A DNA stretch of 64,000 nucleotides. It comes from Adineta vaga. Lineage: Eukaryota > Animalia > Rotifera. The position numbers and the translations under genes are program-made. Under the pieces are notes generated by a model, which saw nothing but the letters and a program-made list of their open reading frames with translations, had not been told where the DNA came from and did not search any database. The stretch lies in NCBI GenBank assembly GCA_021613535.1, contig CP075494.1:7626001-7690000 (forward strand), read 5' to 3'. Below, one piece after another: positions 3,325-44,600 of the stretch. The first letter of the stretch is position 1. Each line of letters begins with the position of its first letter.

Positions 3325-6226
3325 TTAACGTGGTGGCGGTGGTGGAGGAGGAGCAGATTTCGGTAAAGGAGGTACAAAACCAGTATTATTGTTTTGATAA
3401 TATTGTTGTTGTTGATAAACACTTTGATAATACATTGCGTTGTATTGATTCCATTGATTCCATTGTTGCTGAGGATTGGACCATGAGGATGATGAATTCG
3501 TATTACTATTAGTTCCTCCATTCTCCATCAATGCTGGAATATGTTGAGCGCGATATGAGTCGCCTTCGATATAGGACGAATAATTATTATTACGATTATT
3601 TCGTCGAAGAAGATAATGTCCATCAAATACATCATTATTATTATATCGAGGGCCAGTATTACTCCAATAATTTGATGAAGACGAGGTCGATGATGGTGGT
3701 TGTGGTTGTGGTGGTAGTGGTGGTTGTAGTGATTGATTCGAAGAATTATTATTTGGATTGAGAGACATTAACGATGGAGGGTTCTAAATGTAGAATAAAA
3801 ATGTTTATATTTAATTTGATATTCTCATATAATAAACAGAAATCTCTCGAAATGAAGTTTATTACTTACATATCCATTCGTAGTATTTGTCGGTATATTA
3901 TTGTAAGATGCAGGTGTACCAGATGTATTATTTCCACCAGGCATTCCACCTGCGATTGCTAACGTAGGTCCACTTGTTCTTGATCCACTCATTAAATTTT
4001 TTCGATCTTCTAACGACAAAGCACTTGTATCCGAATCTTTTTTACCTGTTAGTTCATTAATTAAAGATTGATACTAAAAATACAAGAAAATCTTTACTAA
4101 ATCAATAGACATTTTTTACTTCGAAACACTTACTTCACAATCTAATTTTTGTTGTTCAACTCGATTTGCGCCAGCAATCATGAGTGATCCATCAGGATTC
4201 AATTCAGCATAAGTACCATCTGGATTTTTACGAAATTTACAATCTCCTGAAATATGTCCCGCTCCACCGCATATTGTACACACTATTGTATTTGTCACAA
4301 TCTTTTCAGCTTCAGTCATTAATTTGAGTTTACTAAAAGAGAGAAGAATATTTTAGAAAGAAAAATAAACCACAAATTTATTACTCACATGAGACAATCA
4401 TTTTCTCGTAATGTACCATGAAGTAAAGCTAATTCTCTTAGTTGTTGTTTACGCAATTCATTCATGCCTTCGGGTTCATCAATGGCTTGACTGATAATTT
4501 CATTGACTTTTTCCACAGCTTTAGCGACAATTTCTGGTGTAGTTCCAGTTATATAAGCATGTAATGGTTCATCTTCACCAGGCAATGGACCAAATTTGAC
4601 TAGACCCATTTTACCATCTTTAATTGAGCCTTTACCTAAAAAAAGACGAGATCGTACATTGGAAAATCCATATCGATTAGATTTTATACCTCTTATGATA
4701 ATTTTTGCATTAGTCTAGAGAAGAAAATGAAAAAGATTTTTCTTTTCTTTACAGATGAAAATATACAATGAGATAAATTACTTCTTTTTCTAATGTTTTG
4801 AGAGTGTTGCCACGCGGTCCAATAATTAAACCAACAAAATTAACTTCGGGATGATCTTCTTGTGGAATCATCACTTTATCAATATATTTTGCTTGTTGTG
4901 GTCTAAAAAACAAATACAAAATCAATCTCCTTAATTTAAATAAATCAATTTTCTCTAGATACATACTTATAATCTGCAGGTGCTTTATAATCTGGATTGA
5001 GTACCAATAATTCAGTAACAAGTTGATGACGTTGATCTTCAATTTTACGTCGTGCTCGAACTTCGCGTGTATTTTGTCGTTTTCCTTGTTGATCATAGAT
5101 GGGTTCAGGTGATGGCGATCTAAACAGAAATTCAATTAATTCTTTTCTATCAAGGATTCGTTTTTACTACATAAAAATTATGAAAATTAATACTCCATCG
5201 TGTAGAATACGGAACTAGAATACAAGAGAATATTAGAAATTCACCTGAAAGAAAAAATGATTAGAGAGGGATTCATTTAGAATACATGTTGGTTTGTACG
5301 CTTGGCTTTTTTTTTATATGTAATCTCACCTTGCAATATCAATTGACGTTCAACGTCACACATATACAGGAGAAGATGACTAGAAAAAGGAAGAGGAGTT
5401 TATTATTAGAGGAAAACAAATCATAATGGGAGGAGCACTTCTGTTCGGTATATATACGGTGCATTAGAAGTAGAATTCGTAGCACTAAATAAAACAAAAA
5501 AAAAAGAGAGAGCTTTTTCTTCATTATTAACTAACATAGAATCGATACTCATAGAAGAATGTATGGATAAAAACGAAAGGCGAAGAAAACGAGATAATTG
5601 AAAAGAAAGATGATAAGTAATTTTTTAATTATATTTACCTTGCTTCTATATTGGATGGAATACCTAGATCATTCATTTTTAAACGACGTGTTAATTCTTC
5701 AATTTGAACTTGTACTAAAAATGAAAGAAATATAAAAATTCAATTTAAATATCAAGAAAGTCTTACGAATATAAATTTTTTGTTGTTGATCGGTCATGTT
5801 ACTTGTCGAAATATTCGTTGGCATGTTTGGGAGAAAAACTCTTTCTGTTTCATCACCAAAACGTCGTTTGCGCTTTTTTTGAGTATTAATTCCATTCGTA
5901 TCCGCTGGAAGAGATAAACAGATGGTGAAATTCCTTGAAATGACTTCTTTCTTACCTGGTGATTGATCGCCTATTGGTGAGCTATTTTTTTCTTCATCTT
6001 TCACATCTAGTTTGGCCAAAACTGCTGGAGGTACCATTACAGAAGGAAGTCGTGCTTTATAGACGGAATTATTTCCATTTTCATTTGTTGATCCTTCTTC
6101 CTTTTTCATAGAAATATTCGTTGATGGTGGCGTACCTTCATCACTAGATTTACGGGAACGTTTATGACTTTTTTTATGTCGTCGAGATGGACTTCGACTA
6201 CGTGAACGAGGACTTCTTGAAGGCAT
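3325..6226 (-). CDS. SF1: Splicing factor 1 / branchpoint-binding protein (KH-QUA2, zinc knuckle, Pro-rich C-terminus), multi-exon
   Basis: RS-rich N-terminus, KKRKRRF ULM-like motif, RSPSPEPIYD motif (exon from 5119), NFVGLIIGPRGNTLKTLEKE KH domain, LRKQQLRELALLHGTLRE QUA2, CTICGGAGHISGDC knuckle, PPPPPPPR* end. Confidence 0.95.
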
Positions 6227-6807
6227 ACTTAGAACTTAGTTAGAATGAGAGTTTATTTTTGATGAATGAAACTGTTTTGTGTGAGAGAACAAGAAGTAAT
6301 TGACAAAGATATAGAAAGAAAATATTATTTACATCATTACTTTCATTTCATTGGTATAACTGCCTCCTTGAGAAAGAAGACACAAATTAATTGAGAAGAT
6401 TTTTCGTTAGATGTCGCTAGGTAATAATCGAATGAGATGTATGAGAAAACAATAAACATAAAATTGTTCATTTTAGTTAGATGAAAGAAACAATTTTGTA
6501 GCATTATTCAAGATGAAGTTCTCTATTTTTCAATATTCATAGCATACGTATTCTCCATATATTCACGATATACATTATATCGTTATAGAATAAAACACAT
6601 AACTTACCTTCAAATATATCTTCAATGAATAATTGACTTCATCAAACTATAGAAAAAAGATGATCATGAAAGTATACCAATGAAATCTTCGATGATTTTA
6701 TACAATTTATTAAAAATTAAAAAACAGACAATAAGTATAAGATATATATATATATTCGTGATTAAAATTTGTTAAATAAGAAAAAACAAATCGAAAAAAT
6801 CTCCTTG

Positions 6808-7311
6808 ATTGCGAAATTATCTGCGAACGAGTGTTCCTTCAATCAACATATTCCAATGAATTCTTAGACAAATTGTGATAGTTTGATTCTCCAAACTTTT
6901 CGAAAAGACGTAAATATTCGAATACGATCTATCTTGTAGCATCAATTCAGTTGATTACGTTTATCAATAAACAAATAAGATTCTTTCTATCGAAATTAAT
7001 GACTTAGATCTTTCAGATCATTCACCAACTTTATATTTATATACAAAACCAGATGAATGATATGAAAGAAACTAAGAAGAGAAAAGGTAACCCATTGACT
7101 GTTACAGATACAAAAAGTCTAAACTCAAAAATGATGTTTTTTTTTAATAGTAATTTTAAGTGGCGCAGGGAGAAAGGGGAAGTTGTTTTTGTGTCGAAAT
7201 AAGCACAGAACTCTTTTCGAGAAGTTTGGAAAATCAAACTATCATAATTTGTCTAAGAATTCATTGGAATATGTTGATTGAACACACTCGATACAAAGAT
7301 AATTTAACAAT
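6808..7311. repeat. Inverted repeat: arms ~6808-6908 and ~7212-7311, ~300-nt spacer
   Basis: Reverse complement of 6838-6908 matches 7212-7282 with only 3 mismatches (all transitions); weaker similarity extends ~30 nt further outward. Confidence 0.9.
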
Positions 7312-28736: not shown

Positions 28737-30605
28737 ACACTTATTCGACTTGATTATTCTGTAATAACATTTGGCGCTTATTTGCTATGCAATTACGCAT
28801 GATTACTTTTTTTTCTTCTCTTTTTCTAATAGCGGTAGGCGTAGCCTGCGTTCTTTTCTTTTGAAAAGTATTCTTATTAATTCAACAGAAATAAAGAAAC
28901 ATTTATGATTAATCGATTTCATTAGATCAATATGTTTTTATTTATTGATTATCACATTCGAGAAAATAATATGGCGAATATTTTAATGAATTCTCTCAAA
29001 TGAGTATACTTTCATTTATTAGTGAATAATCTATTCCGTTTACATCATCGCTATATTCAAATGCGTTTTATTACTTCTGAAACAGACAGAAAAATCTAAT
29101 CTGACACCTCTCTGTCAAGTCAAATATTAATCAACGAAACACATCTGTTTCTATTTTGTAATCAGATACTAATCGATTTCAATCTATACATATAACTATT
29201 TGTCTTTTGGTTATGTGCGATCACATACTGTTTGATTAAACTTGTTATATTCATAACATAGTTGTCGTTATGTGTATAGAAAACATAATATGTAGAAATA
29301 ACTTAGACAGTAAAATCATTGTTTTTCATTGTGACTCGTGATATTTTGATTAAGGATAAAATAACGAATAAAAAGCAAAAAAAAAGCAATACCTCTATGT
29401 TTGTTGTCACCTATACAACAACATAATACTCTTACTGTGTGATTTTTACATATTACTTTTTCTCATTTTTCGACCAATATCGAACCCAGTAAGCACTTGT
29501 TTGACCTCAAATTTAAGTTTTGCTTTGCAATATTTATTACTCTTGAAACTTACGAATAACTATTGAATACCATTCATCATTCTCTTCATTTCTTTGATAT
29601 TTTAAAAGTTCGTCATCTATGGAAGTGGACGAGCAAGAGTCAGCCAGACCTTCGATTAGTCTAGATACTCTTCAAATACCAATATCCAATGAAATCGAAA
29701 TAGCTGATATAACAAGACAAAATTCCGTAAGTGGATCATCCGAATTTAAGTGAACTATACGTCAGTATATGCCCAAATCATGTATTCATAAAACTTCTGT
29801 TCTCTAACAGATGGATTTATAGTCGAGGCTGACGTGTCTTTTTAATAAAGAAAAACAAATGACTTGATTCTTTGTATGAATCATTGAAGACAAAGAAAAT
29901 TGCAAGTTATTATTATGGATGATGATGGTAATGATAACGTGTAAGCGTCCTACTCATGTACCGTCTTTTTTTCATATTTTACATATAGAAAGAAAAAAAT
30001 CAAGAGAAAAAAAGAGCACCCTCGGCAGATACTAAAAAGTGGTTTTCGTTCGAGCGCGACGGTTAAGTACACATAGGCAATATACTTCCAAAGATATTTT
30101 ATTTTCATGATACTCCTCTATACTACTTCTCATGTACATTTATGAAAAAATGCGAGAATCATCAACGTACGGCACGTACTTTTCTTTTTCTCTGGTTCTC
30201 TCTTGATTTCTCTACCGATTGTCCTTCGCAAATGGTGCACATTTGCACATCCAGATATTTTTTCCCGCGTCATTTCTTTGTAAGACTGATATTGTTTTCT
30301 CCATCGTTGACTACTACATCGATATGAGATACTGTGATCGATCACAAAGGGTAATCCGACTAGTTAGAAAGGAGAAATCGTCTTGTAATTGAGATATTGA
30401 TATCCTAAAAGGAGTTGTTGTTTATCATTTGTTTATATTAAAGCATTTATACTTCTAACAGAAAGACGAAAAAAAAGGCAGGTGATATTCTTGTTTGTTT
30501 TAACGGTACTAATTGAATGTATAGATAATATATACATATATTGACAACGATTTTCTTCGTCGATACGCTTCATTTATATATTCATAACGAGAAGCAAAAA
30601 GAAAT

Positions 30606-31857
30606 ATGTCTTCAGACGATCCACATGGTATTGAATCGGCAGGTGTAAGTTTTATGCTTAATATTTTCTTTCAAAATTATCTTTCGTTTCTATTCTTATA
30701 TATACGAAAAAATACTGATTCTATTATCTTGTCTTCATGTAGCCTGCTCTATTCGAACGAGACCGTGAAGGGTCGGAATCCGAACGACATGGTTGGAATT
30801 TTAAACAACGTTTACCTGTAGCCATGCGTCCTCCAGATCGAACAGTACGTGTTCTATCTTATGATAATTTTCAATCGATCATATTTTTTTGTTGTCTAGA
30901 GACCACCAAATTTTTTGTTGGACGCTCGATTTTATTCAATGAAGAAAACAGCTATGACTTTAATGTGTCTACTGGTAAGAAATCGACTCAAGTTAAAGTA
31001 GAATAGTCTAAATATAGACACGTATTTAATGTTTGTCACGATCTTGATATTAGCAGTCATTGACGTCGTTTCAATATTAACCTTGCATATGATGCAATTG
31101 AATAGCGTCGATATAATAATTATGATATTATCAATAGTCATAAAGAAAAGAAGATTGTTTTTTTTATTTGTAGAGAAAAAGAACTAATGTTTTCGTTTCT
31201 TTTTTTTATTATATTCCATTTCTTAGATGATTATCATGAGCAATAGTGTTCAATTAAAACATGTATTAAAACAAGGTTCACTACATTCATTCTATGGTAC
31301 TCAAGTTACATTGGGAATTATATCAATATTGATGTGTACTTCGATTGGTAAGTTCCATAGATATTTTTTCTTACTTATTTTTCAGTTCTTAACAGTTCAA
31401 TTTTTCTTATTCATTTCGTTAAATAAGTCGTAATCGTTTCCTACCTTCCCTTGACGGTTTCTAGGCTTTATTCAATTGTATACATTTCTCTTTACATGGC
31501 ATGATCATCTCCTATTGCCATCAAGTCTTACAACAAGTTTGACACGTTATGATCAACTTCTTATCGTACTTCCAGCGATTTTAACCATCATTCTATTTTT
31601 ATTTGATGCAATTTTTTTGACGATTATGTTTCAGTTTTAATAGAAAAAGAAAATAAATAGCTTTTTAGTTGGACATTATTCTTCGATTTCGTATTGTCAA
31701 ATATCTTCTTTTTTTAGGTGTGGTTTTAATGTATGTTATGCGAGTCGATTACAATGATCAATATAAACATTCGAAACTTGATTACATAGACAATTGTGTC
31801 ATATGTCTACTATTCATTTTGGGTATCTTTAACATTTTTATTACTGCATGCAGTTAG
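30606..31857 (+). CDS. Ninjurin-family membrane protein; exons 30606-30644, 30743-30845, ~30900-30974, 31227-31347, 31718-31857; alternative first exon 29619-29726
   Basis: Spliced translation FYSMKKTAMTLMCLLMIIMSNSVQLKHVLKQGSLHSFYGTQVTLGIISILMCTSIGVVLMYVMRVDYNDQYKHSKLDYIDNCVICLLFILGIFNIFITACS parallels NINJ1 (YASKKS...LLMANASQLKAVVEQG...YDLNNPAKHAKLDFLNN...VNIFITAF). Confidence 0.82.
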
Positions 31858-32683
31858 TACAATTATGTTTCGTTTCCCATTTTCAATATGATGTAGAATT
31901 TTAGGGTGTCTTTCGTTTCTTTTTTTCTCTTTGTTCTCTTTTTTGTTTATGGTTTATGTGTAGAGAAAACAAGAAATATACATAAAAAACACATTTGTAT
32001 TAAGAATAACTGTGAATTCTAAAGAAAAAAAAGTACTTTCTTTCATTGATGTATATTTTTGTTCGTGAATGTTATCTGATTATTTCAATTCATTTCACCG
32101 ATCATAAAATATGTATTTTAGTGGTTTTCTTGATATCATTGGTATGTACTATTTCTAACTAAATTACATATTTATCATAGTCAAGAAAGTATGCTCGATT
32201 CATTGTATCTTGGTTATAGTGCGTGTGGTATGAATGGTCTTCTTTTTATAGCTCACATTCATCATCGAATTTATACGAGTCATCACCACAATATGAATTA
32301 TCATCGTATCTGATTAGAATATCTTCTCCTCTTGTGAAATGTATTCAATCATCAGTTACTGAACTAGTTTCTAGAAAGTGATCTGCGCGTAGTACGAATA
32401 TATTTGATTCTATGGAAAGCGACATCTTTTGTTGAGTTTATTTTCTATTGGTTCAAGACATTTCATCCAATGAAAAAATAAGGTCTTCTCATTTGTATGT
32501 CTTTGTACTCATGTATTGAACTTGATTTAGCCGATGCATTCAATCTAATCTTATATTAGCTAACTGATCTATTCATTTCAAACTCGGAAAGTCTCATATG
32601 GTAGAGGTAGATTTTTACAAATAAGAAAGTCAATGAATATGTATTGTTTGTTTTGAATTATATCTATCTAGACAGATTCAAAC

Positions 32684-34293
32684 ATGGCATCAGCCAAAAA
32701 ATCAACAGCAACACCGAATCCATTGTTAAAAACATATGGCGAACGACCTGTTCCATTTCAATTTCCTGGTAATCAGGAAAAAATGTATATTGGATCTGAA
32801 GTATAATATTTCAAGTGACACTTTTTTCGATGTATACTAAATCTTAACTTTATTTTAGGTTGGCAATTATCTACGATTATTTCGTGGAACATTGTATAAG
32901 AAATATCCTTCATTATGGCGTCGAATGATTACATTAGAGGAACGTAAATGGTTAATCGAATTAGGCTGTTCAGAATCATCATTACCAACAAATTTAACAT
33001 TATTACGTGCAAATGAAGTAGATGAAATTTTAAATGGTGATGATGAAAAATATCGTGCCTTAACTTTAAATAGTGAATCAGCTACAACACGAGCGTATGA
33101 ATATCAATCAATCTTCTAGTTCTTTTGTAAAATAAAAACAATCATTTTCTTCTAGTGATAAATCAAAACGATCAACATGGGTACCATCATTTCCAACAAA
33201 TTCTCATCATCTCGATGCTGTACCAGCTGCAACACCAATCAATCGAAATCGAACAGCAACGAAAAAGAAAACATTTCCTTTATGGTAATTATCTTCAATT
33301 CTTCTCATTATTTATTTGATCATCTATGAAAAAAAAACACTTTAGTTTTGATTATACGGATGCATCATCTGCATTAGACAACTCTCAACAATCAGAAGAT
33401 CTTGTACCTATTCGATTGGATATGGAAATTGAAGGACAAAAATTACGTGATACATTTACATGGAATAAAAATGGTAAACATAAGCACAATATCTCAACTG
33501 AATATTTTGACTATATTTTGTTTCTAGAACAATTGATTACACCGGAAATGTTTGCAGAAATTCTTTGTGATGATCTAGATCTGAACACAATGGCATTTGT
33601 ACCTGCCATAGCACAAGCTATTCGACAACAACTTGAATCACATCATAATGATTTTCTCGAAGATAATAGTGATCAACGAATTACAATAAAAGTAGAGAAA
33701 TAGATCAGTTAGAAGAACATATCGTTAGATTTAAAATTGTTATGTTTTATTTTAGTTGAATATTCATGTTGGAAATGTTAGTTTAGTAGATCAATTCGAA
33801 TGGGATATGTCGGATAAACACAATAGTCCAGAAGAATTTGCTCGTGTATTAGCATCAGAATTGGGTAAGCAAGAATTAACCGATGACAAACGAAAGCTTG
33901 ATGAAAATTTTGTATGTATTCTTAGGACTTGGTGGAGAATTTGTTACTGCAATAGCTTACAGTATTCGAGGTCAACTAAGTTGGCATCATAAAACTTTTT
34001 CCTATAGGTAAGCAAAGATAAATTCTATTGTCGCGAAATATTCCAAAGTATTTTTGTTCTAGTGAAACGCCAATGCCAACTGTTGATGTTGCTACACGAA
34101 CAAATCATGATGCTGAACAATATTGTCCATTTTTGGAAACACTTACAGATGCAGAAATGGATAAAAAGATTCGTGATCAAGATCGAAATACAAGGTATTA
34201 TCATATTTTATTGAATATTAGAAATTACAGTTTCTTTTTGAATTTATTTCTAGACGTATTCGTCGTCTGGCTAATACTGGTTCAGCTTGGTAA
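32684..34293 (+). CDS. SMARCB1: SWI/SNF subunit SNF5/INI1, multi-exon
   Basis: KTYGERP...[105 protein letters not shown]. Confidence 0.97.
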
Positions 34294-34525
34294 ATATAAT
34301 TGTATCTAACATTTTCTTCTTATTGTTGTTCGTTTGTCTTTGTCAAATTTTCTCTATGAATAAAAAGAAACTTAATATAAGTATAGCGAGGAATGAATAT
34401 TATTGTGATTTTATCAAAGGAAACTCATATATTTCGTTCAATGTTAATGAATTCTATTCTATAATAAATTTAATACAAGCAAAATAAGTAAATTCTGTGC
34501 TATAAATATCGATTATGAAACTTGA

Positions 34526-35017
34526 TCATTGTCCTTGTTTAGTATTGATAATTTCTCGTGTTAAATAACGTTCGAATGAAGGAACTATACGTGTATATGA
34601 ACTGTGAATATACGGTGAAGTAAATAGAAAATCTGCTGTTGATACATTACATGCCATTGGTATATTCCAAACACTTGCTAATCGAGTCAAAGCTCGAACA
34701 TCGGAATCATGTGGTTGTGCTTGAAGTGGATCTGCCAGAAAGATTAACATATCAATACATTGTTCAGCTATTTTCGCACCTAATTGTTGGTCACCACCTA
34801 ATGGTCCCGACTTATACTTAATGACTGGTATACCTAAATTTGATTCGATTAATTTTCCAGTTGTACCAGTCGCATGCAATTCATGTTTGATCAATTCATC
34901 ACGATTTCGTTTCACCCATTCGAGTAATTCACCTTTTTTATTATCATGAGCAACTAATGCAATGCGTTTTCTTTCACCGATTTGAAATGTTTGATCATTA
35001 GATTGATTTACAGACAT
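34526..35017 (-). CDS. mgsA: Methylglyoxal synthase, bacterial type, intronless CDS (candidate horizontally acquired gene)
   Basis: 163-aa ORF with IALVAHDNKK, ATGTTG, SGPLGGDQQLGA, DPLQAQPHDSDVRALTRLASVWNIPMACN.STADF; all hallmark MgsA motifs present. Confidence 0.95.
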   Translation of the reverse strand: MSVNQSNDQTFQIGERKRIALVAHDNKKGELLEWVKRNRDELIKHELHATGTTGKLIESNLGIPVIKYKSGPLGGDQQLGAKIAEQCIDMLIFLADPLQAQPHDSDVRALTRLASVWNIPMACNVSTADFLFTSPYIHSSYTRIVPSFERYLTREIINTKQGQ

Positions 35018-35642
35018 CTAAAATGATTTTCTGAAGATAATTGATTTAGTCTGATTCTGATTCTGATTCCATATAAATCAATTCGTAAACTCAATCGTTA
35101 TTATATTTATTATCATATTTTTCTGTATTTGAAGAAACGATTTTTTGTATAGAATTTCTTATTGAGAAATCTATATTAGAAAATTGTAGGAATAATCAAG
35201 ACATGAATGATAGTGTATCATTTTGTTGTTATTCTTTAAGTCTGTTACAAAAATCATCAGCAATGGCCAGCTAGTTTTTCTTATATATCAGCGATATCTT
35301 TTTTCCAAAACGATATCGTGTTCTTCTTCTTCGGTTCGGTTATCTATCTATTAATAGATCGACAAGTCTCATTCTCATCTCCATGTAAAACTGATTGACA
35401 AATCCATCCTTTTTCCTTTTTGTTGTACTTATTATTGTATTGGTTCAGATTTTAATCCAATCATTGTCAAGGAAATATTTGTAATCTGATGACTAATAAA
35501 TCATCAAATGCTTATATGTTCTTATATTCTGTTCTGTCTTCTTCCGAAACCTGTTTTTTCTATTAATAAAAACCTATATTGCAACAATCGAATTATATAT
35601 ACAGTGAGCATTTGTTTTTGTCTATAAAAAGAATCCTAGTAG

Positions 35643-38600
35643 ATGGCAGAGATATCATCAGCAACAGAGAATAAAACTCTTGGTGATTTTTATCAGAATG
35701 TTACGTCAAAAGAACCAAGTATACGATTAGAATGCTTTCCAGCAATGGAAAACTTTTTATTGAACAATGAAACATCACTTGATTGTGATGATCTACCTGG
35801 TTTTATTAATGGGTTGATCAAATGGATTGAAGGCAGTAATTTTCGAGTAGGAGTTGTTCTGTATGGTTGTTAATAAATATTTGAGATTCTATTTAGATTG
35901 CACATAATGGATTGCGAACGTTAGAAATGCTTATCGATCGATTAGATTCGAATGAATTTGGAAATTATGTTGAACAAGGTATTTAAACATTGTTTTTTTT
36001 CTTCGAAAAGAAAAACATGTATGTTTTATGTAGTTACATCTGCAACAGTTGATCGATTGGGTGATTCTAAAGATCAAGTAAAATTATATATTTCTTCAAT
36101 CAAATATAAACATAATAACTCTACTTAGGTTCGGGAAGCTGCATCTAATCTTCTAATTAAACTTATGACTACTTATACTGTTCAAGTAATGACTCATTCT
36201 AATTTGTATATATGCATGATTTTATTCGTTATAGCGTATTTGGGATTTAATACAACCATTAGTATTTGATAGTAAACAATTTCGTATCAAAGAAGAAAGT
36301 CAACGTTTATTAATACGATCATTAGATGAGTATGTATTTTATATAGTATAACAAATGTGGAAAGAAAAAGAATAAGATCTTATCTTTCCAATCGACCTTT
36401 TAATCTTCCTAAAGGAATCATAATCAACCTTTTTTTTCTCATACCCCGGATTATTTGTTATTGTAACAATTGACTGAATTCTTTTCTACATAAAGCAATC
36501 ATTTCAATGATAAACAAACATATGTTTGGATGCTTTATAATTGAGCATATACAATCAACTATTACAATTCTTTTTCTTGTTTTTTTGCTCATACTCATAG
36601 ATACGTTTGTATATGTCTGCGTCCTTCTGTCATCATTAATAAAAAAAAGGATATAGTGAAAGAAATGTAAGGACAGCTGTTGAACGGTCAGCAACTATGG
36701 GAAGTATCAAACATTACAAAAGAACGAAAGAAACAGAAAGAGAGCGAGAGAGAGAGAGAGAGAGAGAAAAGATGCTATTGTGACTATCTAATAGAATGTA
36801 TTAAAAGAAAAGCTCTTATGTACACTTCTTCATTTCTTCTATCATACGATCTATGAGAGTGTTGGAGTAGCAAAAAAGAACTCAAGATTATTACATTAAT
36901 AATCAATCAAAGATGACAACGATAAAACGTACTTCAATCATTGAGTAAGTTCATCAGCAGAACTTTGTTATTGTCATTGTATCTCTGAACATTTTCCTTT
37001 TATATGAAAAGGCTAATTCAATAAAAATGTAAGAGATTGATCTTTGCATACTAATGAGTCATTAGAACATTGACATCATGTCTTCATTACAGCTTTTTTT
37101 CGCAATCAAATTGAAAACTAAATATACTTTTATAACTACATACCTTGACTCTTGTTCGTTCAAGCACGAATATACAAGTTCATTGATGAATATACATATA
37201 CGTATAGATGTGTATGCATAGGATGAGAGACATCGTACTGTGTGTAACATACAAACAGATAGAGATATAATGATTGTTAGAGTCTATTACGCAAGATGTA
37301 AATGACATATTTCTCTCGTTAACGATCGCCATCGCCTTTCCTTCTGTCTATTTAATCCAACTGAGTGTTATTATTTAGTGGATTTCGATCTTTTCTTTGT
37401 CTTGTCGTCTATAGTGAGTTACTTTCGACTGAATTAATTTCCCTGGTCAATAGGCAAGAAAGGATTAGAAATTATAGTAGTGTTATCAATATATTGTCGA
37501 GTTGATATGAAACGTACCTCGCCTACACAGATCATTAATAAGTAAGTAAATTAGGAATAGATCAGATTTCTGTGAATATTTAATTCACATTAAAATCATG
37601 AAATAATGACATTTTGTTTTCTTCTAAAAGGTTTGGTGCATCAACAATACAGTTGAGTAAACTTGTCCCATTGATATGTAAACTTGTATCAGATTCGAAT
37701 GGTGCTGTAAGTATTTGATTGATGACGTAAAGTCGATGATTTGTTATGATTTATCAATAGGTTCGTCAACAAGCAATTGATACTCTTGTGGAAATCTATC
37801 GTCATGTTGGAGAAAGAATACGTGGTGATATTGCTAAAAGAGATATTCCGGAAGCGAAGTAAACTAAGATTAATTGTTATTGAACTTACTTGAAATTATA
37901 ATCATTTTAGATTGAAACAACTCTATGAAAAATTTGATGATGTTATTGCAACTGGTCGAATGATTGCTAAAGCATCTGATTTAACTGATGATAGTAAGTT
38001 ATATATTGTAAATGTTACGTGTTCTTTACTATTGAATCGTTGACTTTCTTTTTTTTGATTATTAATCAAACTGAAAGATCATACTTGTATTAACTCAGTT
38101 ATCGAAAATGTAACGATAGAAATGATGATAAGATGATTGGGAGATATACGAAAAGAAAGTGCAAAACGAGGGAGGCATACATTGAATGTGTACCTATATA
38201 TATATATACATATGCAAGTCACAACGTACGTTAGTATCGTACTTGAACTTATCGAAATTGAATAGGTACTTGCTTGAATTGAAGCAATGGATTCATCTTT
38301 ATTTGAACGATTTCTTGGTACATCATCTACTCATTTTCATTTACCAACATTAAATGAAGAAGAAAATGATGAAGTTTATCCGTTACTTCATATTGAATTC
38401 TGTCGATTAAATAAAACGAGACAATTATTAATAGGTATACAAAAAAGAAAAATTAAATTTCAAATGCAAAGTTTTCGTTCTATTTACTCTCATTTTCTTT
38501 GCATTTACCCTTTGTTTCTTTATCGAATTGTAATCGATTCGTTGAACCTAGAAATTGATTTCTCTTTCATCTCTATTCTTTCTTTCTACACGTGTACATC

Positions 38601-41600
38601 TATCAATGCTTCATTTTCTTTTTTTTCAATTCCATCTAAGGTATCGATGATCGTTTATATGTACATGTGTAATTTTCATTGATATTCAAATTTGATCAAT
38701 AGTCAAAAGAATAAGAGAAAGAACGAAAGAGCATATCAGTCATAGAGATGTTTTTAGCGAGTAAACCCCGTAAGATCAAAATTGATTTGTAAATTTCGTT
38801 TCTTTTTTGTAATAAAAATGATCTATTTTTAGCTCGACCCAAATCATCAACAACTCGATCTCGATTGAATTCAGATAGTAGTACAACATCAATTCGTTCA
38901 CGACCAAGTGGAGGTATTCCAACACGAACGACTTCATCCATTTCTGCAGGTAATTTAAATGGAAACTCATGAAAATTAGAAAATATTCGAGACATAACTA
39001 AATATAGTTTCATCATCTAATAATTCTCGTATTCGTTCATCTTCGAGTATATCTCGCCCACATGCATCTGCAACAATAACAACAACAACAGGAGGTATTA
39101 TCATTATTATCTCTTGCTCTTCTTCGTGTTGTCCGATATCTGTATTAGTCGTTTTTCTAACACGTGTTTCTATTATTGTTGTTTGATTCAGTCATATGTA
39201 CATTTATTGCATGATGATGTAAGATATATTGATCATGCAGAGAACAAGATGTTTGATGTAGTAAAGAATATTAAAACGAGATAATTGAATTAAATGAATT
39301 GTAAGAGAAATCTTTTTGTTTTTAGCTGCTGCCAGTGGTGCTGTTGATGAAGCACTGTTTGAAGATGCATTCAATTCATCTCATGCAATGTCGGTAAGAA
39401 TGATAACTTTGACCTATTGTAATCTAAGATGAGAAAACATTTGCTTATATGTCAACTATCCCATCTGGCAAAGATATATATATATATTATCTCATCAAAT
39501 GTATTGAATCCTGAAGATATTTTCTTTGAATTTAAGATTTCATCGGGTAAAGATGTTGAAAATCAATTGTTGGCAGTTCGAGAAATACTTGCCGATACAA
39601 ATAATGATTGGGAGAAACGTGTTGAAGCAGTAAGAAAAGTTAATTTATTAATTTTATCACACATGTTTATTCAATTTAGATCAAACGTTTACGTTCGATC
39701 ATATCCGGTGGTGGTGATCAATACGATGAATTTTTTCGGACACTTCGTCAACTTGATTTACCGTTAGTCGCAACTGTCAAAGATTTACGTTCACAAATTG
39801 TTCGTGAAATTTGCATTACACTTGCATTTATGTCAATACGTTTAACAAATCGTTTGGAACGAACAGTAGAATTTGTTCTTCCTGCGATGCTTAATCTTAT
39901 TCAAAATAGTGTAAAAGTCATGGCTACAAGTGGAACTGTTGCTTTGCGTTATATTATAACTAATACTCAATCGAGTAAACTTATTCCATTAATATTAGAT
40001 GGAAGTGTATCAAAATCGAAAGATATTCGAAGGTTAGTTGATATTTGTTCTTTCTTCCATTATTGATCACAAAAGATTTTGATTTTGTATTTTATAGACA
40101 AGCTTATGAGCTATTAGTTATTATACTTTCACAATGGAATTTTGTTTACCTGGAAAAGCATGGTCAATTAATGCATGATGTGATTAAAAAAGGTTTATCA
40201 GATGCTGATGCAGAAGCAAGATCAAATGCTCGAAAAGCATTTGGATCATTTCGTGAACATTTTCCAGCCATAGCTGAGACACTTCTTGCTTCATTGGAAC
40301 CATCAAAAAAGAAGACATTGATGGTTTGTTTCGAAATTAATAATGAAAGTTTTCTTCAATTAGTATTCATCATTAAAATAGGGTGAAATGAGCAATGCAT
40401 CAAGTACACATTCATTAGCAAGTGTTGGTAGTTCAAGAATACGTTCTGGAAAAGAGTTAGTAAAATTCAAAAGAAAATAAATTGTTTTGTATTGAATGGT
40501 TTGTTTCTTTTAGAACGGCATCAAGACAATTGAGAAGAGAAAGCATTGGTAAGACATCTAATTTTATTTGAAATTAAAAGAAAATCTGTTCGTTATTATT
40601 CTATTATTTAGAGAAACAAAATTCATCGAGTAATTTAGCTCGTTCATCAAGTGCGAATGAACTCGCGCTACGACAGAAAAATTCTCTATCAAACAGTAAG
40701 TTATGACACTATTTCGATGAATCAATTCGAATAATATTATTCTTTCAAGGTTTAAATTCAACTGGTATTCCAACAAAAACAAGTAAAGATTGATCACGAA
40801 GATTTGATTGTATGCTCTATATAAATGATTTAGGTCGAACTCGATATCTTCCTCAACAATCGAATGTAGCAAAATCTGCTTCAACAACATCAGCTCGTCC
40901 ACCACAAATTGTTTCTCAATCTCAACCTGGTAGTCGTTCAACATCACCAAATTCATTACGACTATCTTATCTTTCATCGTCATCACGTACACCGACGAAT
41001 GCTCGTGCACGAATACCAATTAGTTCAAATGGAGGTTCAAGAATATCGAGTCGAGAATCAAGTCCAGGACGAACAAGTACGTTTGGAATTCTTTTGTGTT
41101 CTTTTTCACTTTAATTCATATGTGAAAGTGAGATATGTCATTATCAAATACTGAGACATTTTTCAGCTTTGTCTATCAATGGTGTCAGTGGTAATAGACG
41201 TCGATCAGGACGTAAGTTTTGTAGGATAAATATATGTTGTGTGTTAATATCTTAGTTGTGATTTCTTGATTAATAGGATTTCTTAATTAACATGATAGCA
41301 TTTATTATTTGAAATTGAAATGATTATATTTATATTTTAGGATCTTATGGTTATCGAGGACCAGGAAGTGATTATGGTGATCATGGAGGTCAACGTCGTG
41401 TTAGTGGTTCTTGGTATGGTGATAGTGGTGATGATGCATCAGAAACATCAAGTATCTGTTCAGAAAGATCATTGGAAGTATGTTTACAAACAATGATAAT
41501 CTTAATGAATTGATCTATGAGAGAAAATCATGTATTTGTTTTTAGGATATTGCTGATGTTTTACGTCGTATGTCAAGTAATGAATGGGCTGAACGAAAAG

Positions 41601-44600
41601 AAAGTTTATCTAGTTTATATCACATGATTCGAGCTGGTCGTGTATTCAGGTATGCTATTACTTAAGTCTGTAAGTCTTATCTAAAATTTTGTACATTGAA
41701 GTCCTCCAGAATTGAAACGTTTAACAGAATTATTAACAAAACGTTTCTATGATCCACATTCACAAGTGTTTGCTTCGTTTCTTGATGTTCTACCTGAATT
41801 TATCATTGCATATAAACGTGAATTAAATGATTGGCTTTATGCTTTATTAACTCGTTTATTAATTCGTTTGGGTGCAGCTGATTTACTTGATTCCGTTGCA
41901 AAAAAATTAAAACATTGTTTAACAATTGTTAACTCTTCGTTTGATGTTCATGCGCAATTTACAGTACTCATTCGATTTGTTAATGATAATTCATCAGCAC
42001 CAAGCGTAAAAGCAAAAGAAATTGTTTTACGTTATTTACAACAAGTTATTCAACATATGGAACCGGTAGATATCACTAATAAAAGTGATATACGAACTGC
42101 TCTATCAAAAATTATTAATTGGTCAAGTGAACCGAAAAGCATTGAAATGAGAAAAGTAAGATTATGCTTAATATTTGACAACTTTCTACAATGTCATTAT
42201 AGGCAGCACAAGCCGTTATTTTTGCTCTATATAATCTGAATCGACCTGAATTCAATCTGATGCTTACTGCACTACCACAAGATTATCAAGTAAGGATTCG
42301 TTAATGAAGTATAGATCATGGTTCGATGCTTCATTCTTTGATTATTATTATAGTTTAGAAAAGTGTTGAAGATCTGTAATCGAGAACTCTGTAGGAATAC
42401 AAATGTATCGTATTAAAGAGCTTTTGTACGACATTATATTATGCACTCTCTTCCTTTTTTATTCGTAATTTTATGTGAAAAGAACATAAAGAGTAAATCC
42501 TTCGTAGTTTGTTCTCAGCATACATTTACTCTATCTGGGAAAATAAGAACACTTTCAATGAAATCATTCGCAAAAATCTACGTGCTAAAAATGAATAAGA
42601 GCAGATCTGATGTAGATTATCTAGTGTAAATATTTAGAGTGATGATTTGCGCTTGTATCTAAAGATAGATTTATCAATTATTAAGAAGTTTTAAAGTTGT
42701 CTGGATCTTTCAAGAAAAACTTATCCTTCTCTAGCAAGAAATGTATTCATTTGCCTTTGTCATTTTCTTTTACATTTATTCATTCATTAAATCATGACCC
42801 GAGGAAATGTCGTCTGGAAACTGAATTTCAAAGTTTAAAAACAATGCCATATATCTTTTCTAGGATACTGCAGCAAAAATTATTCAATCTGCTAATGATA
42901 CTCCGTCACAACTTGACAACAAGTAAAACAAAATCTTTCGTCTCTTTGTCTTCTTTAATATTTTCTATTCATTTCATTTTTAGATATGACTTTTTTCGAC
43001 GAACAAGTCTTTCTGGTTTACCATCACCTATGACAACATCAATGCATTCCGATGTTCATGCACCAACATACGCTTCTGACATGCGTATTTTAATGGAAAA
43101 TATGCAAGCATTAAATGTTAATCATCGTCAAGAAGATTCATTAATGAATTCAGCACCATTAAAAGATAAAGAACATCGTTCAATGATACCAGTTCGTCAT
43201 CATACATCGCAATCATATCATTCACGAGCACATCAAACAGAACCATCAGACGTATGTAATCTGAGATCATGCTAATTTTGTTTCTTTTATGATGTAATTA
43301 ATGTAGAGTATTTCTGATGCTACTGATCGTCCTGAAGCAATTGATCAAGCTCTTAACACCGCTAATAATAATGCAGTATCAAAAGATCAACGACAACATG
43401 CTCTCCGTTGTATTTTAAAATTTGCTAAAATCAATGATATTGAAACATGGGATTTAGCATTTAGTAAAACATTAAACGTTGTAACACAAATTCTGGATAA
43501 TCCTACAGATGATATTATCTATAAAGTCTATAGTTTACGAATCTTACGGGAATTATTAATACATCATACAAATTTATTTATGAATTATATTGAATTAACA
43601 ATATTTCGTATTCTAAAAGCTCAAAGTGAAAGTGAAAGCGAAGTAAATAGTATCATATCTATGAATGTCAAAGTCTTCACTTTCTTCTTTCTTAAGATTA
43701 CTCGTTTTGCCGAACAAGCAGCACATGCTGCTGCTGAACATTTACCAGCAGAGAATACTGTTCGAGTATTGAAACCAATTATAGAACAAGCGAAATATCC
43801 AATGAATCAATCTGCTATAGCTATGTTACAAAAAACAATTGAACTAATGAATAAAGAAATCTGTATTGAATTAATGCCTGAAATGATTCCACCACTTTTA
43901 ACGGTAAAGAAATTTTTCTCTATTTCATTTTTGTTCTTTTTTCTCAAATAAAAGGTATGGGATAGTAATTCCCATAATATCACCGGTGCAACTAGTGTAA
44001 GTGCATGAGATAAACGTAAGCGAACAGTGTTTTTTTGTGTGCAGGAAATGAAGATGTCAATGCTTTTTGCGAAAAACCTGCATGTTGAAAAAGGCATTAA
44101 AACAAAACTGCTTGAGACATCAACTTGTACTTTGATAGAAAATAAAACCATTTGTTTAAATTCTAGTCATGGGATAATGAAACATCAAGTGTACGGAAAG
44201 CAGCAGTCTTCTGTTTAGTATCAATTTATATGGTTGTTGGTGATGCTCTACGTACACATTTGCACAAACTAAGTGCAAGCAAGGTAATGAATGTTTTCTA
44301 TTCTTTCATATACTTTTCGGACATATTTATTACGTTTGATTATTGATCAATAATGTATAGATAGAAACGCTAACTAATGACTCCTTCATAAATCATTAAA
44401 ATGTAATTTGACATACTACCACTAATATGTAGTCATCAGAGACATAACATCGATTTTCAGATAAATTAAAATAATTATTATGATTAGCAGAATTCTTTTA
44501 TAGTCAAAGAATTTCGATAAAATGTCACTAGAAAGAAGCAAATGCTTAGGAATAGATGACAGTTTTGTTTTTGAAAATAACATAGATGTAAATTACGATG

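What the first reader, a model, noticed from the sequence alone, without database searches (positions are those of the whole stretch)
34526..35017. Intact bacterial-type methylglyoxal synthase domesticated between SMARCB1 and CLASP
Seen: an intronless 163-aa ORF with complete MgsA catalytic and phosphate-binding motifs (AHDxKK, ATGTTG, SGPLGGDQQ, DPL..QPHD.DV.AL.R). It lies tail-to-tail with intron-rich SMARCB1 (~230 nt between stops) and head-to-head with CLASP, has host-like AT-rich codons, and has a TTTTAG acceptor directly before its ATG (5'UTR intron or trans-splice site). Established: MgsA (DHAP to methylglyoxal + Pi) is a bacterial glycolytic bypass; animals normally only detoxify methylglyoxal. 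Inference: a horizontally acquired, expressed enzyme could give this animal a methylglyoxal/D-lactate bypass for phosphate recycling under starvation, anoxia or desiccation, or a chemical defence.
Basis: partly seen in the sequence, partly recalled or inferred. Interest (0 to 1): 0.8.

Follow-up and report, generated by a model that had tools for sequence, protein, structure and literature searches.

The report
Bacterial methylglyoxal synthase in a rotifer
A bdelloid rotifer chromosome (apparently Adineta vaga) carries an intact, transcribed and conserved bacterial-type methylglyoxal synthase gene, one more case of the foreign-gene uptake these animals are known for, in an enzyme family that a recent paper says occurs only in prokaryotes.

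Summary
Window 34526-35017 (-) is an intronless 163-aa ORF. It scores as a methylglyoxal synthase equivalog (205 and 184 bits; cut-offs 84 and 147) and keeps every catalytic and phosphate-binding residue of E. coli MgsA.

- **Genome:** six contigs, 100.8 Mb, apparently Adineta vaga.
- **Not contamination:** an RNA contig joins spliced SMARCB1 exons to the mgsA sequence. GC3 matches the host (0.17 vs 0.14). A copy 81% identical lies beside the other CLASP copy on contig C2. Rotaria sordida and Adineta steineri share the order SMARCB1 - AAA ATPase - small ORF - mgsA - CLASP.
- **Expressed and constrained:** RNA contigs from two studies cover the gene. dN/dS is 0.15-0.28.
- **Derived layout:** the tail-to-tail and head-to-head arrangement is specific to this copy, which lost the AAA and small genes and inverted mgsA.
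- **Family:** a second bdelloid-wide MgsA lineage exists (50% identical, basic tail; some Rotaria members carry a UBA-like domain). All 29 bdelloid sequences fall on one side of a branch (98/93) against 69 non-bdelloid rows, bacterial where named. This fits one old transfer followed by duplication. No donor can be named.
- **Open:** the TTTTAG acceptor idea, and any enzyme activity or physiological role.
- **Earlier notes:** first readers of this scan had flagged the other two copies of this genome.

This is a new member of a known kind, bdelloid horizontal gene transfer.

The parts
34526..35017 (-). mgsA coding sequence: 163 aa, no intron, stop TGA at 34526-34528
   Evidence: ORF list. NCBIfam equivalogs NF003559 at 205.5 bits and TIGR00160 at 184.1 bits. 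Ungapped alignment to E. coli MgsA 1b93_A with all active-site residues kept.
34502..35029 (-). Smallest transcribed stretch seen: one unspliced RNA contig that covers the whole coding sequence
   Evidence: X4 record 16 (528 nt) lies on 34502-35029. X2 records 12 and 13 lie on 34509-34921. X1 record 1 runs from spliced SMARCB1 exons through 34252-34963. The same runs skip the GT..AG introns of both neighbours, so they are RNA.
35018..35037 (-). Two acceptor-like motifs just upstream of the ATG: TTTTAG (35018-35023) and TCTTCAG (35031-35037). Candidate trans-splice or 5'UTR acceptor, not proven.
   Evidence: Sequence. A TTTTAG followed by AT is kept upstream of the ATG in the three orthologous loci, ending 19, 22 and 29 nt before the ATG. 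The X4 RNA contig reads through the TTTTAG and ends at 35029, with no loose end.
32684..34293 (+). SMARCB1 (INI1/SNF5) gene, intron-rich and convergent with mgsA. 232 nt separate the two stops.
   Evidence: Pfam PF21459 and PF04855 on single exons. Seven introns of 54-64 nt confirmed by RNA contigs in three runs. The C-terminal exon and TAA at 34291-34293 were read from the sequence.
35643..42239 (+). 5' part of the CLASP gene, divergent from mgsA. It continues beyond 42239.
   Evidence: Exon 1 ORF matches exon 1 next to the C2 copy. PF12348 matches at 39830-40386. Four introns are confirmed and the RNA contigs begin at about 35531-35539. The locus is collinear with the A. steineri CLASP locus.
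35030..35530 (.). Intergenic stretch between the divergent mgsA and CLASP genes, with no RNA contigs; presumed shared promoter region
   Evidence: depth is zero in X1, X2 and X4 between about 35030 and 35530, while the DNA run X10 covers it. GC of 35018-35642 is 0.27.

Best explanation
This is a methylglyoxal synthase gene (MgsA; dihydroxyacetone phosphate to methylglyoxal plus phosphate) of bacterial origin. It became a resident, expressed gene of bdelloid rotifers. The window copy is one of two old duplicate copies in what is apparently Adineta vaga.

The transfer was ancient. It predates the split of Adineta and Rotaria. Both bdelloid MgsA lineages also include Didymodactylos, so it probably predates the bdelloid radiation.

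The gene first sat in a same-strand row: SMARCB1 - AAA ATPase - small ORF - mgsA - CLASP. In the window's copy of that row the AAA and small genes were lost and mgsA was flipped. It now converges on SMARCB1 and shares a roughly 500-bp upstream region with CLASP.

Shown here: identity, integration, transcription, purifying selection, conserved gene order, and retention of all active-site residues. Inferred: the protein makes methylglyoxal from DHAP as bacterial MgsA does, with the product removed by the glyoxalase I and II genes present in the genome. That would give a phosphate-releasing bypass of lower glycolysis, or a controlled source of a toxic electrophile.
For: - **Family:** NF003559 at 205.5 bits and TIGR00160 at 184.1 bits, both over their cut-offs. 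All three genome copies exceed the TIGR00160 cut-off.
- **Active site:** the alignment to E. coli MgsA 1b93_A is ungapped. H19, D20, K23, T45, T47, T48, S65, G66, D71, D91, H98 and D101 are all kept, at positions +5.
- **Integration:** RNA contig X1 record 1 joins seven spliced SMARCB1 exons to 34252-34963. GC3 is 0.17, against 0.14 for SMARCB1.
- **Second copy:** a copy 81% identical lies beside the other CLASP on C2.
- **Shared gene order:** R. sordida and A. steineri have the same order.
- **Expression:** RNA contigs in three runs of two studies. Transcript variants are five synonymous and two conservative.
- **Constraint:** dN/dS is 0.15-0.28.
- **Origin:** the named eukaryotic hits are all bdelloids. 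The best bacterial relatives are 54-63% identical (Bacteroidota, Chloroflexota and others). All 29 bdelloid sequences are on one side of a branch with support 98/93.
- **Downstream enzymes:** a glyoxalase I match of 174 bits, and a split glyoxalase II gene.
Against: - No enzyme assay exists.
- The RNA evidence comes from assembled contigs. These cannot give strand, level, or true transcript ends.
- Absence from other animals, in particular monogonont rotifers, was not tested directly. It rests on the named entries among the top 120 hits of two searches.
- The tree is unrooted.
- The shared AT-rich composition of bdelloid genes could help pull the two bdelloid lineages together.
- E. coli His21 is Asn here, and the counterpart of Arg150 is uncertain, so regulation may differ.
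Confidence: 0.85

Rival explanations
1. Bacterial contamination or a chimeric assembly: the ORF belongs to a bacterium and was joined to rotifer DNA by mistake.
For: The protein is a typical bacterial enzyme and the gene has no intron.
Against: One RNA contig holds spliced SMARCB1 exons and mgsA together. GC3 of 0.17 equals that of the host. A second copy lies beside the second CLASP on another chromosome. Independent assemblies of R. sordida and A. steineri have the same neighbours. No bacterial protein is more than about 65% identical.
Confidence: 0.01
2. The gene was not acquired by bdelloids. It was inherited from an older ancestor (Rotifera/Syndermata or deeper), or it came from a non-bacterial donor.
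For: The donor cannot be named because the bacterial backbone of the tree is unresolved. Other rotifer classes could not be searched.
Against: Every named eukaryotic hit in both searches is a bdelloid and every other named hit is bacterial. A 2024 paper states that MGS is found only in prokaryotes (PMC11897720).
Confidence: 0.08
3. The two bdelloid MgsA lineages (this gene's type 1, and type 2 with the basic tail) come from two separate transfers rather than one transfer plus duplication.
For: They are only about 50% identical, no closer than each is to bacteria. They lie in unrelated neighbourhoods.
Against: In the careful tree all 29 bdelloid rows are on one side of a branch (98/93), and 98% of bootstrap trees agree. 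Didymodactylos branches first in both lineages.
Confidence: 0.1
4. The protein is kept for a role other than making methylglyoxal, such as a binding or regulatory role or a different substrate.
For: Animals are not known to need this reaction. Some type 2 relatives in Rotaria carry added eukaryotic parts (a UBA-like domain), and the A. vaga type 2 copy has a basic tail. His21 of E. coli is Asn here.
Against: All residues that bind phosphate or act in catalysis in E. coli MgsA are kept in all three copies. The equivalog models score far above their cut-offs.
Confidence: 0.1

Closest known systems
Bacterial methylglyoxal synthase MgsA (E. coli 1B93/1EGH/1IK4; Thermotoga maritima 1VMD; PDB entry 6PHE)
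   Same: It has the same length class and a single MGS domain. The alignment is ungapped over about 141 residues, and 47-56% of them are identical by my count of the printed alignments. Every catalytic and phosphate-binding residue is kept. The equivalog HMMs score above their cut-offs.
   Different: It is encoded in an animal chromosome with animal codon usage, next to intron-rich animal genes, and is transcribed there. It has a 12-residue N-terminal extension and a short C-terminal extension. His21 of E. coli is Asn. No activity data exist.
Horizontally acquired metabolic genes of bdelloid rotifers (Boschetti et al. 2012, PMC3499245; Nowell et al. 2018, PMC5916493; Nowell et al. 2024, PMC11258130)
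   Same: It is a bacterial-type enzyme gene that is integrated, matched to host composition, expressed, and conserved across bdelloid genera. It adds a reaction that animals are not known to have.
   Different: This enzyme is not named in the main text or in the held supplementary files of those three papers. No paper in the library pairs 'methylglyoxal synthase' with rotifer or bdelloid. The gene lies at 7.66 Mb on a 16.9-Mb contig among conserved animal genes, and its neighbourhood is kept between Adineta and Rotaria.
The other two MgsA genes of this genome (C2:12010322-12010789; C5:15261072-15261518)
   Same: All three are intact, have no intron, and score above the TIGR00160 cut-off. The C2 copy is 81% identical and also lies beside a CLASP gene.
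   Different: The C2 copy keeps the ancestral same-strand order with the AAA ATPase and the small ORF, while the window copy is inverted and lost those neighbours. The third copy is 50% identical, has a roughly 50-residue Lys/Ser-rich tail, and lies beside a P450-like gene.

Membership tests
Methylglyoxal synthase (MgsA, EC 4.2.3.3; TIGR00160 / NF003559) | Scores above the curated cut-off of the equivalog models over their full length | tested here: met
   NF003559 scores 205.5 bits (cut-off 84) over positions 4-143 of 145. TIGR00160 scores 184.1 bits (cut-off 146.9) over positions 2-141 of 143. The genome scan gives 183.9 bits.
Methylglyoxal synthase (MgsA, EC 4.2.3.3; TIGR00160 / NF003559) | Catalytic residues of E. 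coli MgsA: Asp71 (base), His98, His19, Asp91, Asp101. Their roles are taken from my own knowledge of the Saadat and Harrison structures. | tested here: met
   The ungapped alignment to 1b93_A (query residue = E. coli residue + 5) gives D76, H103, H24, D96 and D106, all identical.
Methylglyoxal synthase (MgsA, EC 4.2.3.3; TIGR00160 / NF003559) | Phosphate-binding residues Lys23, Thr45, Thr47, Thr48, Ser65, Gly66 | tested here: met
   K28, T50, T52, T53, S70 and G71 are all identical.
Methylglyoxal synthase (MgsA, EC 4.2.3.3; TIGR00160 / NF003559) | Converts DHAP to methylglyoxal plus phosphate; homohexamer inhibited by phosphate | not testable with these tools
   This needs recombinant protein. 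No structure prediction was run, because roughly half the residues match solved MgsA structures and that already fixes the fold.
Horizontally acquired gene of bdelloid rotifers | Closest relatives outside bdelloids are non-metazoan | tested here: met
   Beyond the bdelloid entries, every named hit is bacterial. The best genome hits are 54-63% identical, from Bacteroidota, Chloroflexota, Pseudomonadota and others. The bdelloid versus other split has support 98/93.
Horizontally acquired gene of bdelloid rotifers | Physically linked to metazoan genes, so not contamination | tested here: met
   An RNA contig joins spliced SMARCB1 to mgsA. Gene order is conserved in three further loci.
Horizontally acquired gene of bdelloid rotifers | Absent from other animals, including the sister rotifer groups | tested here: inconclusive
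   No non-bdelloid animal appears among the named top hits. Only 120 hits per search are visible and most have no name. No monogonont genome could be searched.
Horizontally acquired gene of bdelloid rotifers | Expressed and under purifying selection | tested here: met
   RNA contigs in three runs of two studies. dN/dS is 0.15-0.28. Variants in the transcripts are mostly synonymous.

The most novel reading that the evidence does not exclude
Bdelloid rotifers would be the first animals with genetically defined, active methylglyoxal synthases. They would hold a small family: two ancient lineages, three genes in A. vaga, and UBA-like-domain fusions in Rotaria. With the glyoxalase genes, this family would give them a deliberate, regulated route from DHAP to methylglyoxal and D-lactate. 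Such a route could release phosphate or unblock glycolysis during recovery from desiccation or starvation, or could make an antimicrobial electrophile.
Probability: 0.4. Interest if true: 0.55.

Novelty: new member of a known kind. Interest (0 to 1): 0.4.

Why it matters
Large-scale uptake of foreign genes by bdelloid rotifers is well established, so one more bacterial enzyme is not a surprise in itself. Two points make this one worth recording.

- **Unreported gene.** The literature held here treats methylglyoxal synthase as prokaryote-only (PMC11897720), and none of the searched papers names it in a rotifer. A conserved, expressed, multi-copy mgsA family in an animal is therefore an unreported exception. 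It would let methylglyoxal biology ask what an animal gains by making this toxin on purpose.
- **Clean dating example.** The locus has the same neighbours in Adineta and Rotaria, both old duplicate copies are retained in A. vaga, and the two copies differ by an inversion and by gene losses.

Tried and rejected
- **Contamination or chimera:** rejected.
- **Naming a donor:** the bacterial part of the tree has supports of only 24-69, so no phylum can be named.
- **Spliced leader or 5'UTR intron at the TTTTAG:** the RNA runs are assembled contigs. None carries a loose end at the mgsA 5' end, and one reads 12 nt through the motif. The question stays open.
- **Inverted repeats at the edges of the flipped segment:** only short AT-rich pairs turned up (15 nt at 93% complementarity, 25 nt at 72%), which are probably chance.
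- **RNA families:** no Rfam match in 30000-40000.
- **Literature:** 'methylglyoxal synthase' with rotifer or bdelloid gave 0 papers. The held supplements of Boschetti 2012, Nowell 2018 and Nowell 2024 have no occurrence of methylglyoxal, MGS-like or PF02142.
- **Gene order in Didymodactylos:** none of the Adineta/Rotaria neighbours lies within its contig of about 12 kb.
- **ESM Atlas look-up:** it only returned MgsA clusters, one of them partly Rotifera.
- **Searches not run:** the big representative-protein search, because it holds no names or taxonomy and so could not show absence from other animals. Structure prediction, as unnecessary.
- **Spliced models:** Exons were scanned one by one by reference. 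SMARCB1 exons were joined only inside a local script to measure GC3, and that script also printed their translation.

Full report
**Observation**

The minus strand of window 34526-35017 holds a 163-aa ORF from ATG to TGA. It matches Pfam MGS (PF02142, 64 bits). It also matches both NCBIfam methylglyoxal synthase equivalogs: NF003559 at 205.5 bits (cut-off 84) and TIGR00160 at 184.1 bits (cut-off 146.9). Solved MgsA structures match at E = 1e-52 (6phe_A) to 3e-45 (E. coli 1b93_A).

The alignment to E. coli MgsA has no gaps, with the query residue equal to the E. coli residue plus 5. The residues I know as catalytic or phosphate-binding from the E. coli structures are all identical. These are His19, Asp20, Lys23, Thr45, Thr47, Thr48, Ser65, Gly66, Asp71, Asp91, His98 and Asp101. 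Their roles come from my own knowledge. Their conservation comes from the tool result. His21 is Asn here.

**Genome and neighbours**

The window is C5:7626001-7690000 of a 100.8-Mb genome in six contigs. The second copy is letter-for-letter 'hypothetical protein I4U23_009503 [Adineta vaga]', and the third is I4U23_026847. The genome is therefore apparently the chromosome-level Adineta vaga assembly. GC is about 31% throughout, with no compositional island at the gene.

Upstream on the plus strand lies SMARCB1. Its exons match PF21459 and PF04855, and its stop TAA is at 34291-34293, 232 nt from the mgsA stop. Downstream lies CLASP, with exon 1 at 35643 and PF12348 at 39830-40386.

**Integration and expression**

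Contigs of four public runs were laid on 33000-37000. Runs X1, X2 and X4, from two studies, skip seven GT..AG introns of SMARCB1 and four of CLASP. Run X10 does not. So the first three are RNA and X10 is DNA.

- X4 record 16 (528 nt) covers 34502-35029, which is the whole coding sequence, unspliced.
- X2 covers 34509-34921.
- X1 record 1 (1916 nt) joins the spliced SMARCB1 exons to 34252-34963.

The X1 contig physically ties mgsA to a spliced animal gene in data other than the assembly. A contig across two convergent genes does not show a single transcript, and contigs give no strand or level.

Variants seen in the transcripts are five synonymous and two conservative changes, P64T and I43V. 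GC3 of mgsA is 0.17, against 0.14 for SMARCB1. Contamination and chimeric assembly are excluded.

**Family in this genome and in other bdelloids**

The genome has three MgsA genes, all intact, without introns, and above the TIGR00160 cut-off.

- The window copy.
- C2:12010322-12010789, 81% identical.
- C5:15261072-15261518, 50% identical and 197 aa long, with a Lys/Ser-rich tail, lying beside P450-like exons.

Word searches found 'type 1' relatives of the window copy in Rotaria sordida, R. magnacalcarata, Rotaria sp. Silwood2, Adineta steineri and Didymodactylos carnosus. They found 'type 2' relatives of the tailed copy in A. steineri, A. ricciae, several Rotaria and Didymodactylos. Several Rotaria type 2 members also carry PF14555, a UBA-like domain. 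Many unnamed metagenome proteins 70-87% identical to the window copy are probably bdelloid too.

**Gene order**

In R. sordida and A. steineri the order is TIR-domain gene - SMARCB1 - AAA ATPase - 81/82-aa ORF - mgsA - CLASP, all on one strand. The C2 locus of this genome keeps TIR - AAA - small ORF - mgsA - CLASP, with only weak, compressed fragments of SMARCB1.

The window locus keeps SMARCB1 and CLASP but has no TIR, AAA or small ORF, and its mgsA is inverted. So the tail-to-tail and head-to-head layout is a later rearrangement of this copy.

The insertion predates both the Adineta/Rotaria split and the duplication that gave the C2 and C5 copies. The Didymodactylos type 1 gene has none of these neighbours within its contig of about 12 kb.

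**Origin**

The best hits in one-genome-per-species bacterial and archaeal contigs are 54-63% identical. They are spread over Bacteroidota (Siphonobacter, Chitinophaga, Arcicella, Ohtaekwangia), Chloroflexota (Anaerolineae), Pseudomonadota, Actinomycetota and others.

The tree used IQ-TREE with LG+C20+F+G4 by PMSF on 98 rows and 158 columns. The rows were 29 bdelloid sequences and 69 others thinned at 72% identity. Of the others, 28 came from named bacterial genomes and 41 were unnamed proteins.

- Type 1 forms a clade with support 99/86.
- Type 2 forms a clade with support 100/99.
- All bdelloid rows lie on one side of a branch with support 98/93.

The bootstrap had not fully settled (correlation 0.953). 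The bacterial backbone has supports of 24-69, so no donor can be named.

This favours one old transfer followed by duplication. The caveats are that the tree is unrooted, that only the nearest non-bdelloid sequences were sampled, and that shared AT-driven amino-acid bias may draw the bdelloid lineages together. Rows left out were proteins over 200 aa from two loci, and near-duplicates above 72% identity.

**Constraint**

Pairwise Nei-Gojobori dN/dS among the window copy, the C2 copy, A. steineri and R. sordida is 0.15-0.28. dS is probably underestimated at this extreme AT3 content. The window copy is the most diverged of the four.

**The TTTTAG**

It lies directly before the ATG (35018-35023, minus strand), and a TCTTCAG ends at 35031. 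The three orthologous loci each have TTTTAG followed by AT, ending 19, 22 and 29 nt before the ATG. The same-strand, closely spaced ancestral row looks operon-like, and from my own knowledge bdelloids do use spliced-leader trans-splicing.

Against this, the only RNA contig that reaches the 5' end reads 12 nt through the TTTTAG, ends at 35029, and carries no foreign letters. I leave the idea as a plausible but unshown acceptor.

**Downstream pathway**

The genome has a single-exon glyoxalase I match (C5:15733463-15733915, 174 bits, above the cut-off). It also has a split glyoxalase II gene (C4:11291111-11291918, 124 + 41 bits). D-lactate dehydrogenase was not searched.

**Literature**

No paper in the library pairs 'methylglyoxal synthase' with rotifer or bdelloid. 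The held supplements of three main bdelloid gene-transfer papers do not mention it. A 2024 paper states that MGS 'is found in only prokaryotes' (PMC11897720). First readers of this scan had independently flagged the other two copies in this genome. I confirmed both.

**Verdict**

This is a real, intact, integrated, transcribed and constrained bacterial-type MgsA gene in a bdelloid rotifer, and part of a small and old bdelloid gene family. It is a new member of a well-known kind, bdelloid horizontal gene transfer. Enzyme activity and physiological role are inferred, not shown.

Exons were scanned singly, and SMARCB1 exons were joined only in a local script that measured GC3 and printed their translation.

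Noticed in passing
L003:1480-2073 (G000:C5:15261051-15261644): A third MgsA gene of this genome: 197 aa, 50% identical to the window copy, active-site motifs intact, with a roughly 50-residue Lys/Ser-rich C-terminal tail, lying beside P450-like exons. It belongs to a second bdelloid-wide lineage (Adineta, Rotaria, Didymodactylos).
   Followed up: partly
proteins P0137, P0144, P0146, P0149, P0163-P0166 (Rotaria spp.): Several Rotaria members of the second MgsA lineage are longer (206-268 aa) and carry a UBA-like domain (PF14555) as well as MGS. This would be a bacterial enzyme fused to a eukaryotic domain, if the gene models are right.
   Followed up: no
L093 (G000:C2:12010001-12020000), reverse strand about 6211-7295: On C2, only short and compressed fragments of SMARCB1 remain between the TIR gene and the AAA ATPase. 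The window (C5) kept SMARCB1 but lost the TIR, AAA and small-ORF genes. This looks like reciprocal loss between the two duplicated regions.
   Followed up: partly
G000:C5:15733463-15733915 (-): A single-exon glyoxalase I match (174 bits, open frame 190 aa) lies about 470 kb from the tailed MgsA copy on the same chromosome. Its origin, animal or foreign, was not examined.
   Followed up: no
L087:4582-8606; L089:5991-8477; L002:1495-2933: AAA ATPase, an 81/82-aa ORF with a hydrophobic stretch, and mgsA lie on one strand with gaps of roughly 120-420 bp in three loci. Each mgsA has a TTTTAG a little upstream of its ATG.
   Followed up: partly
window 34252-34963: In one RNA run a single contig runs from the SMARCB1 3' end through most of mgsA on the opposite strand. 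The 3' ends of the two convergent genes therefore overlap or nearly touch, and antisense read-through is possible.
   Followed up: no
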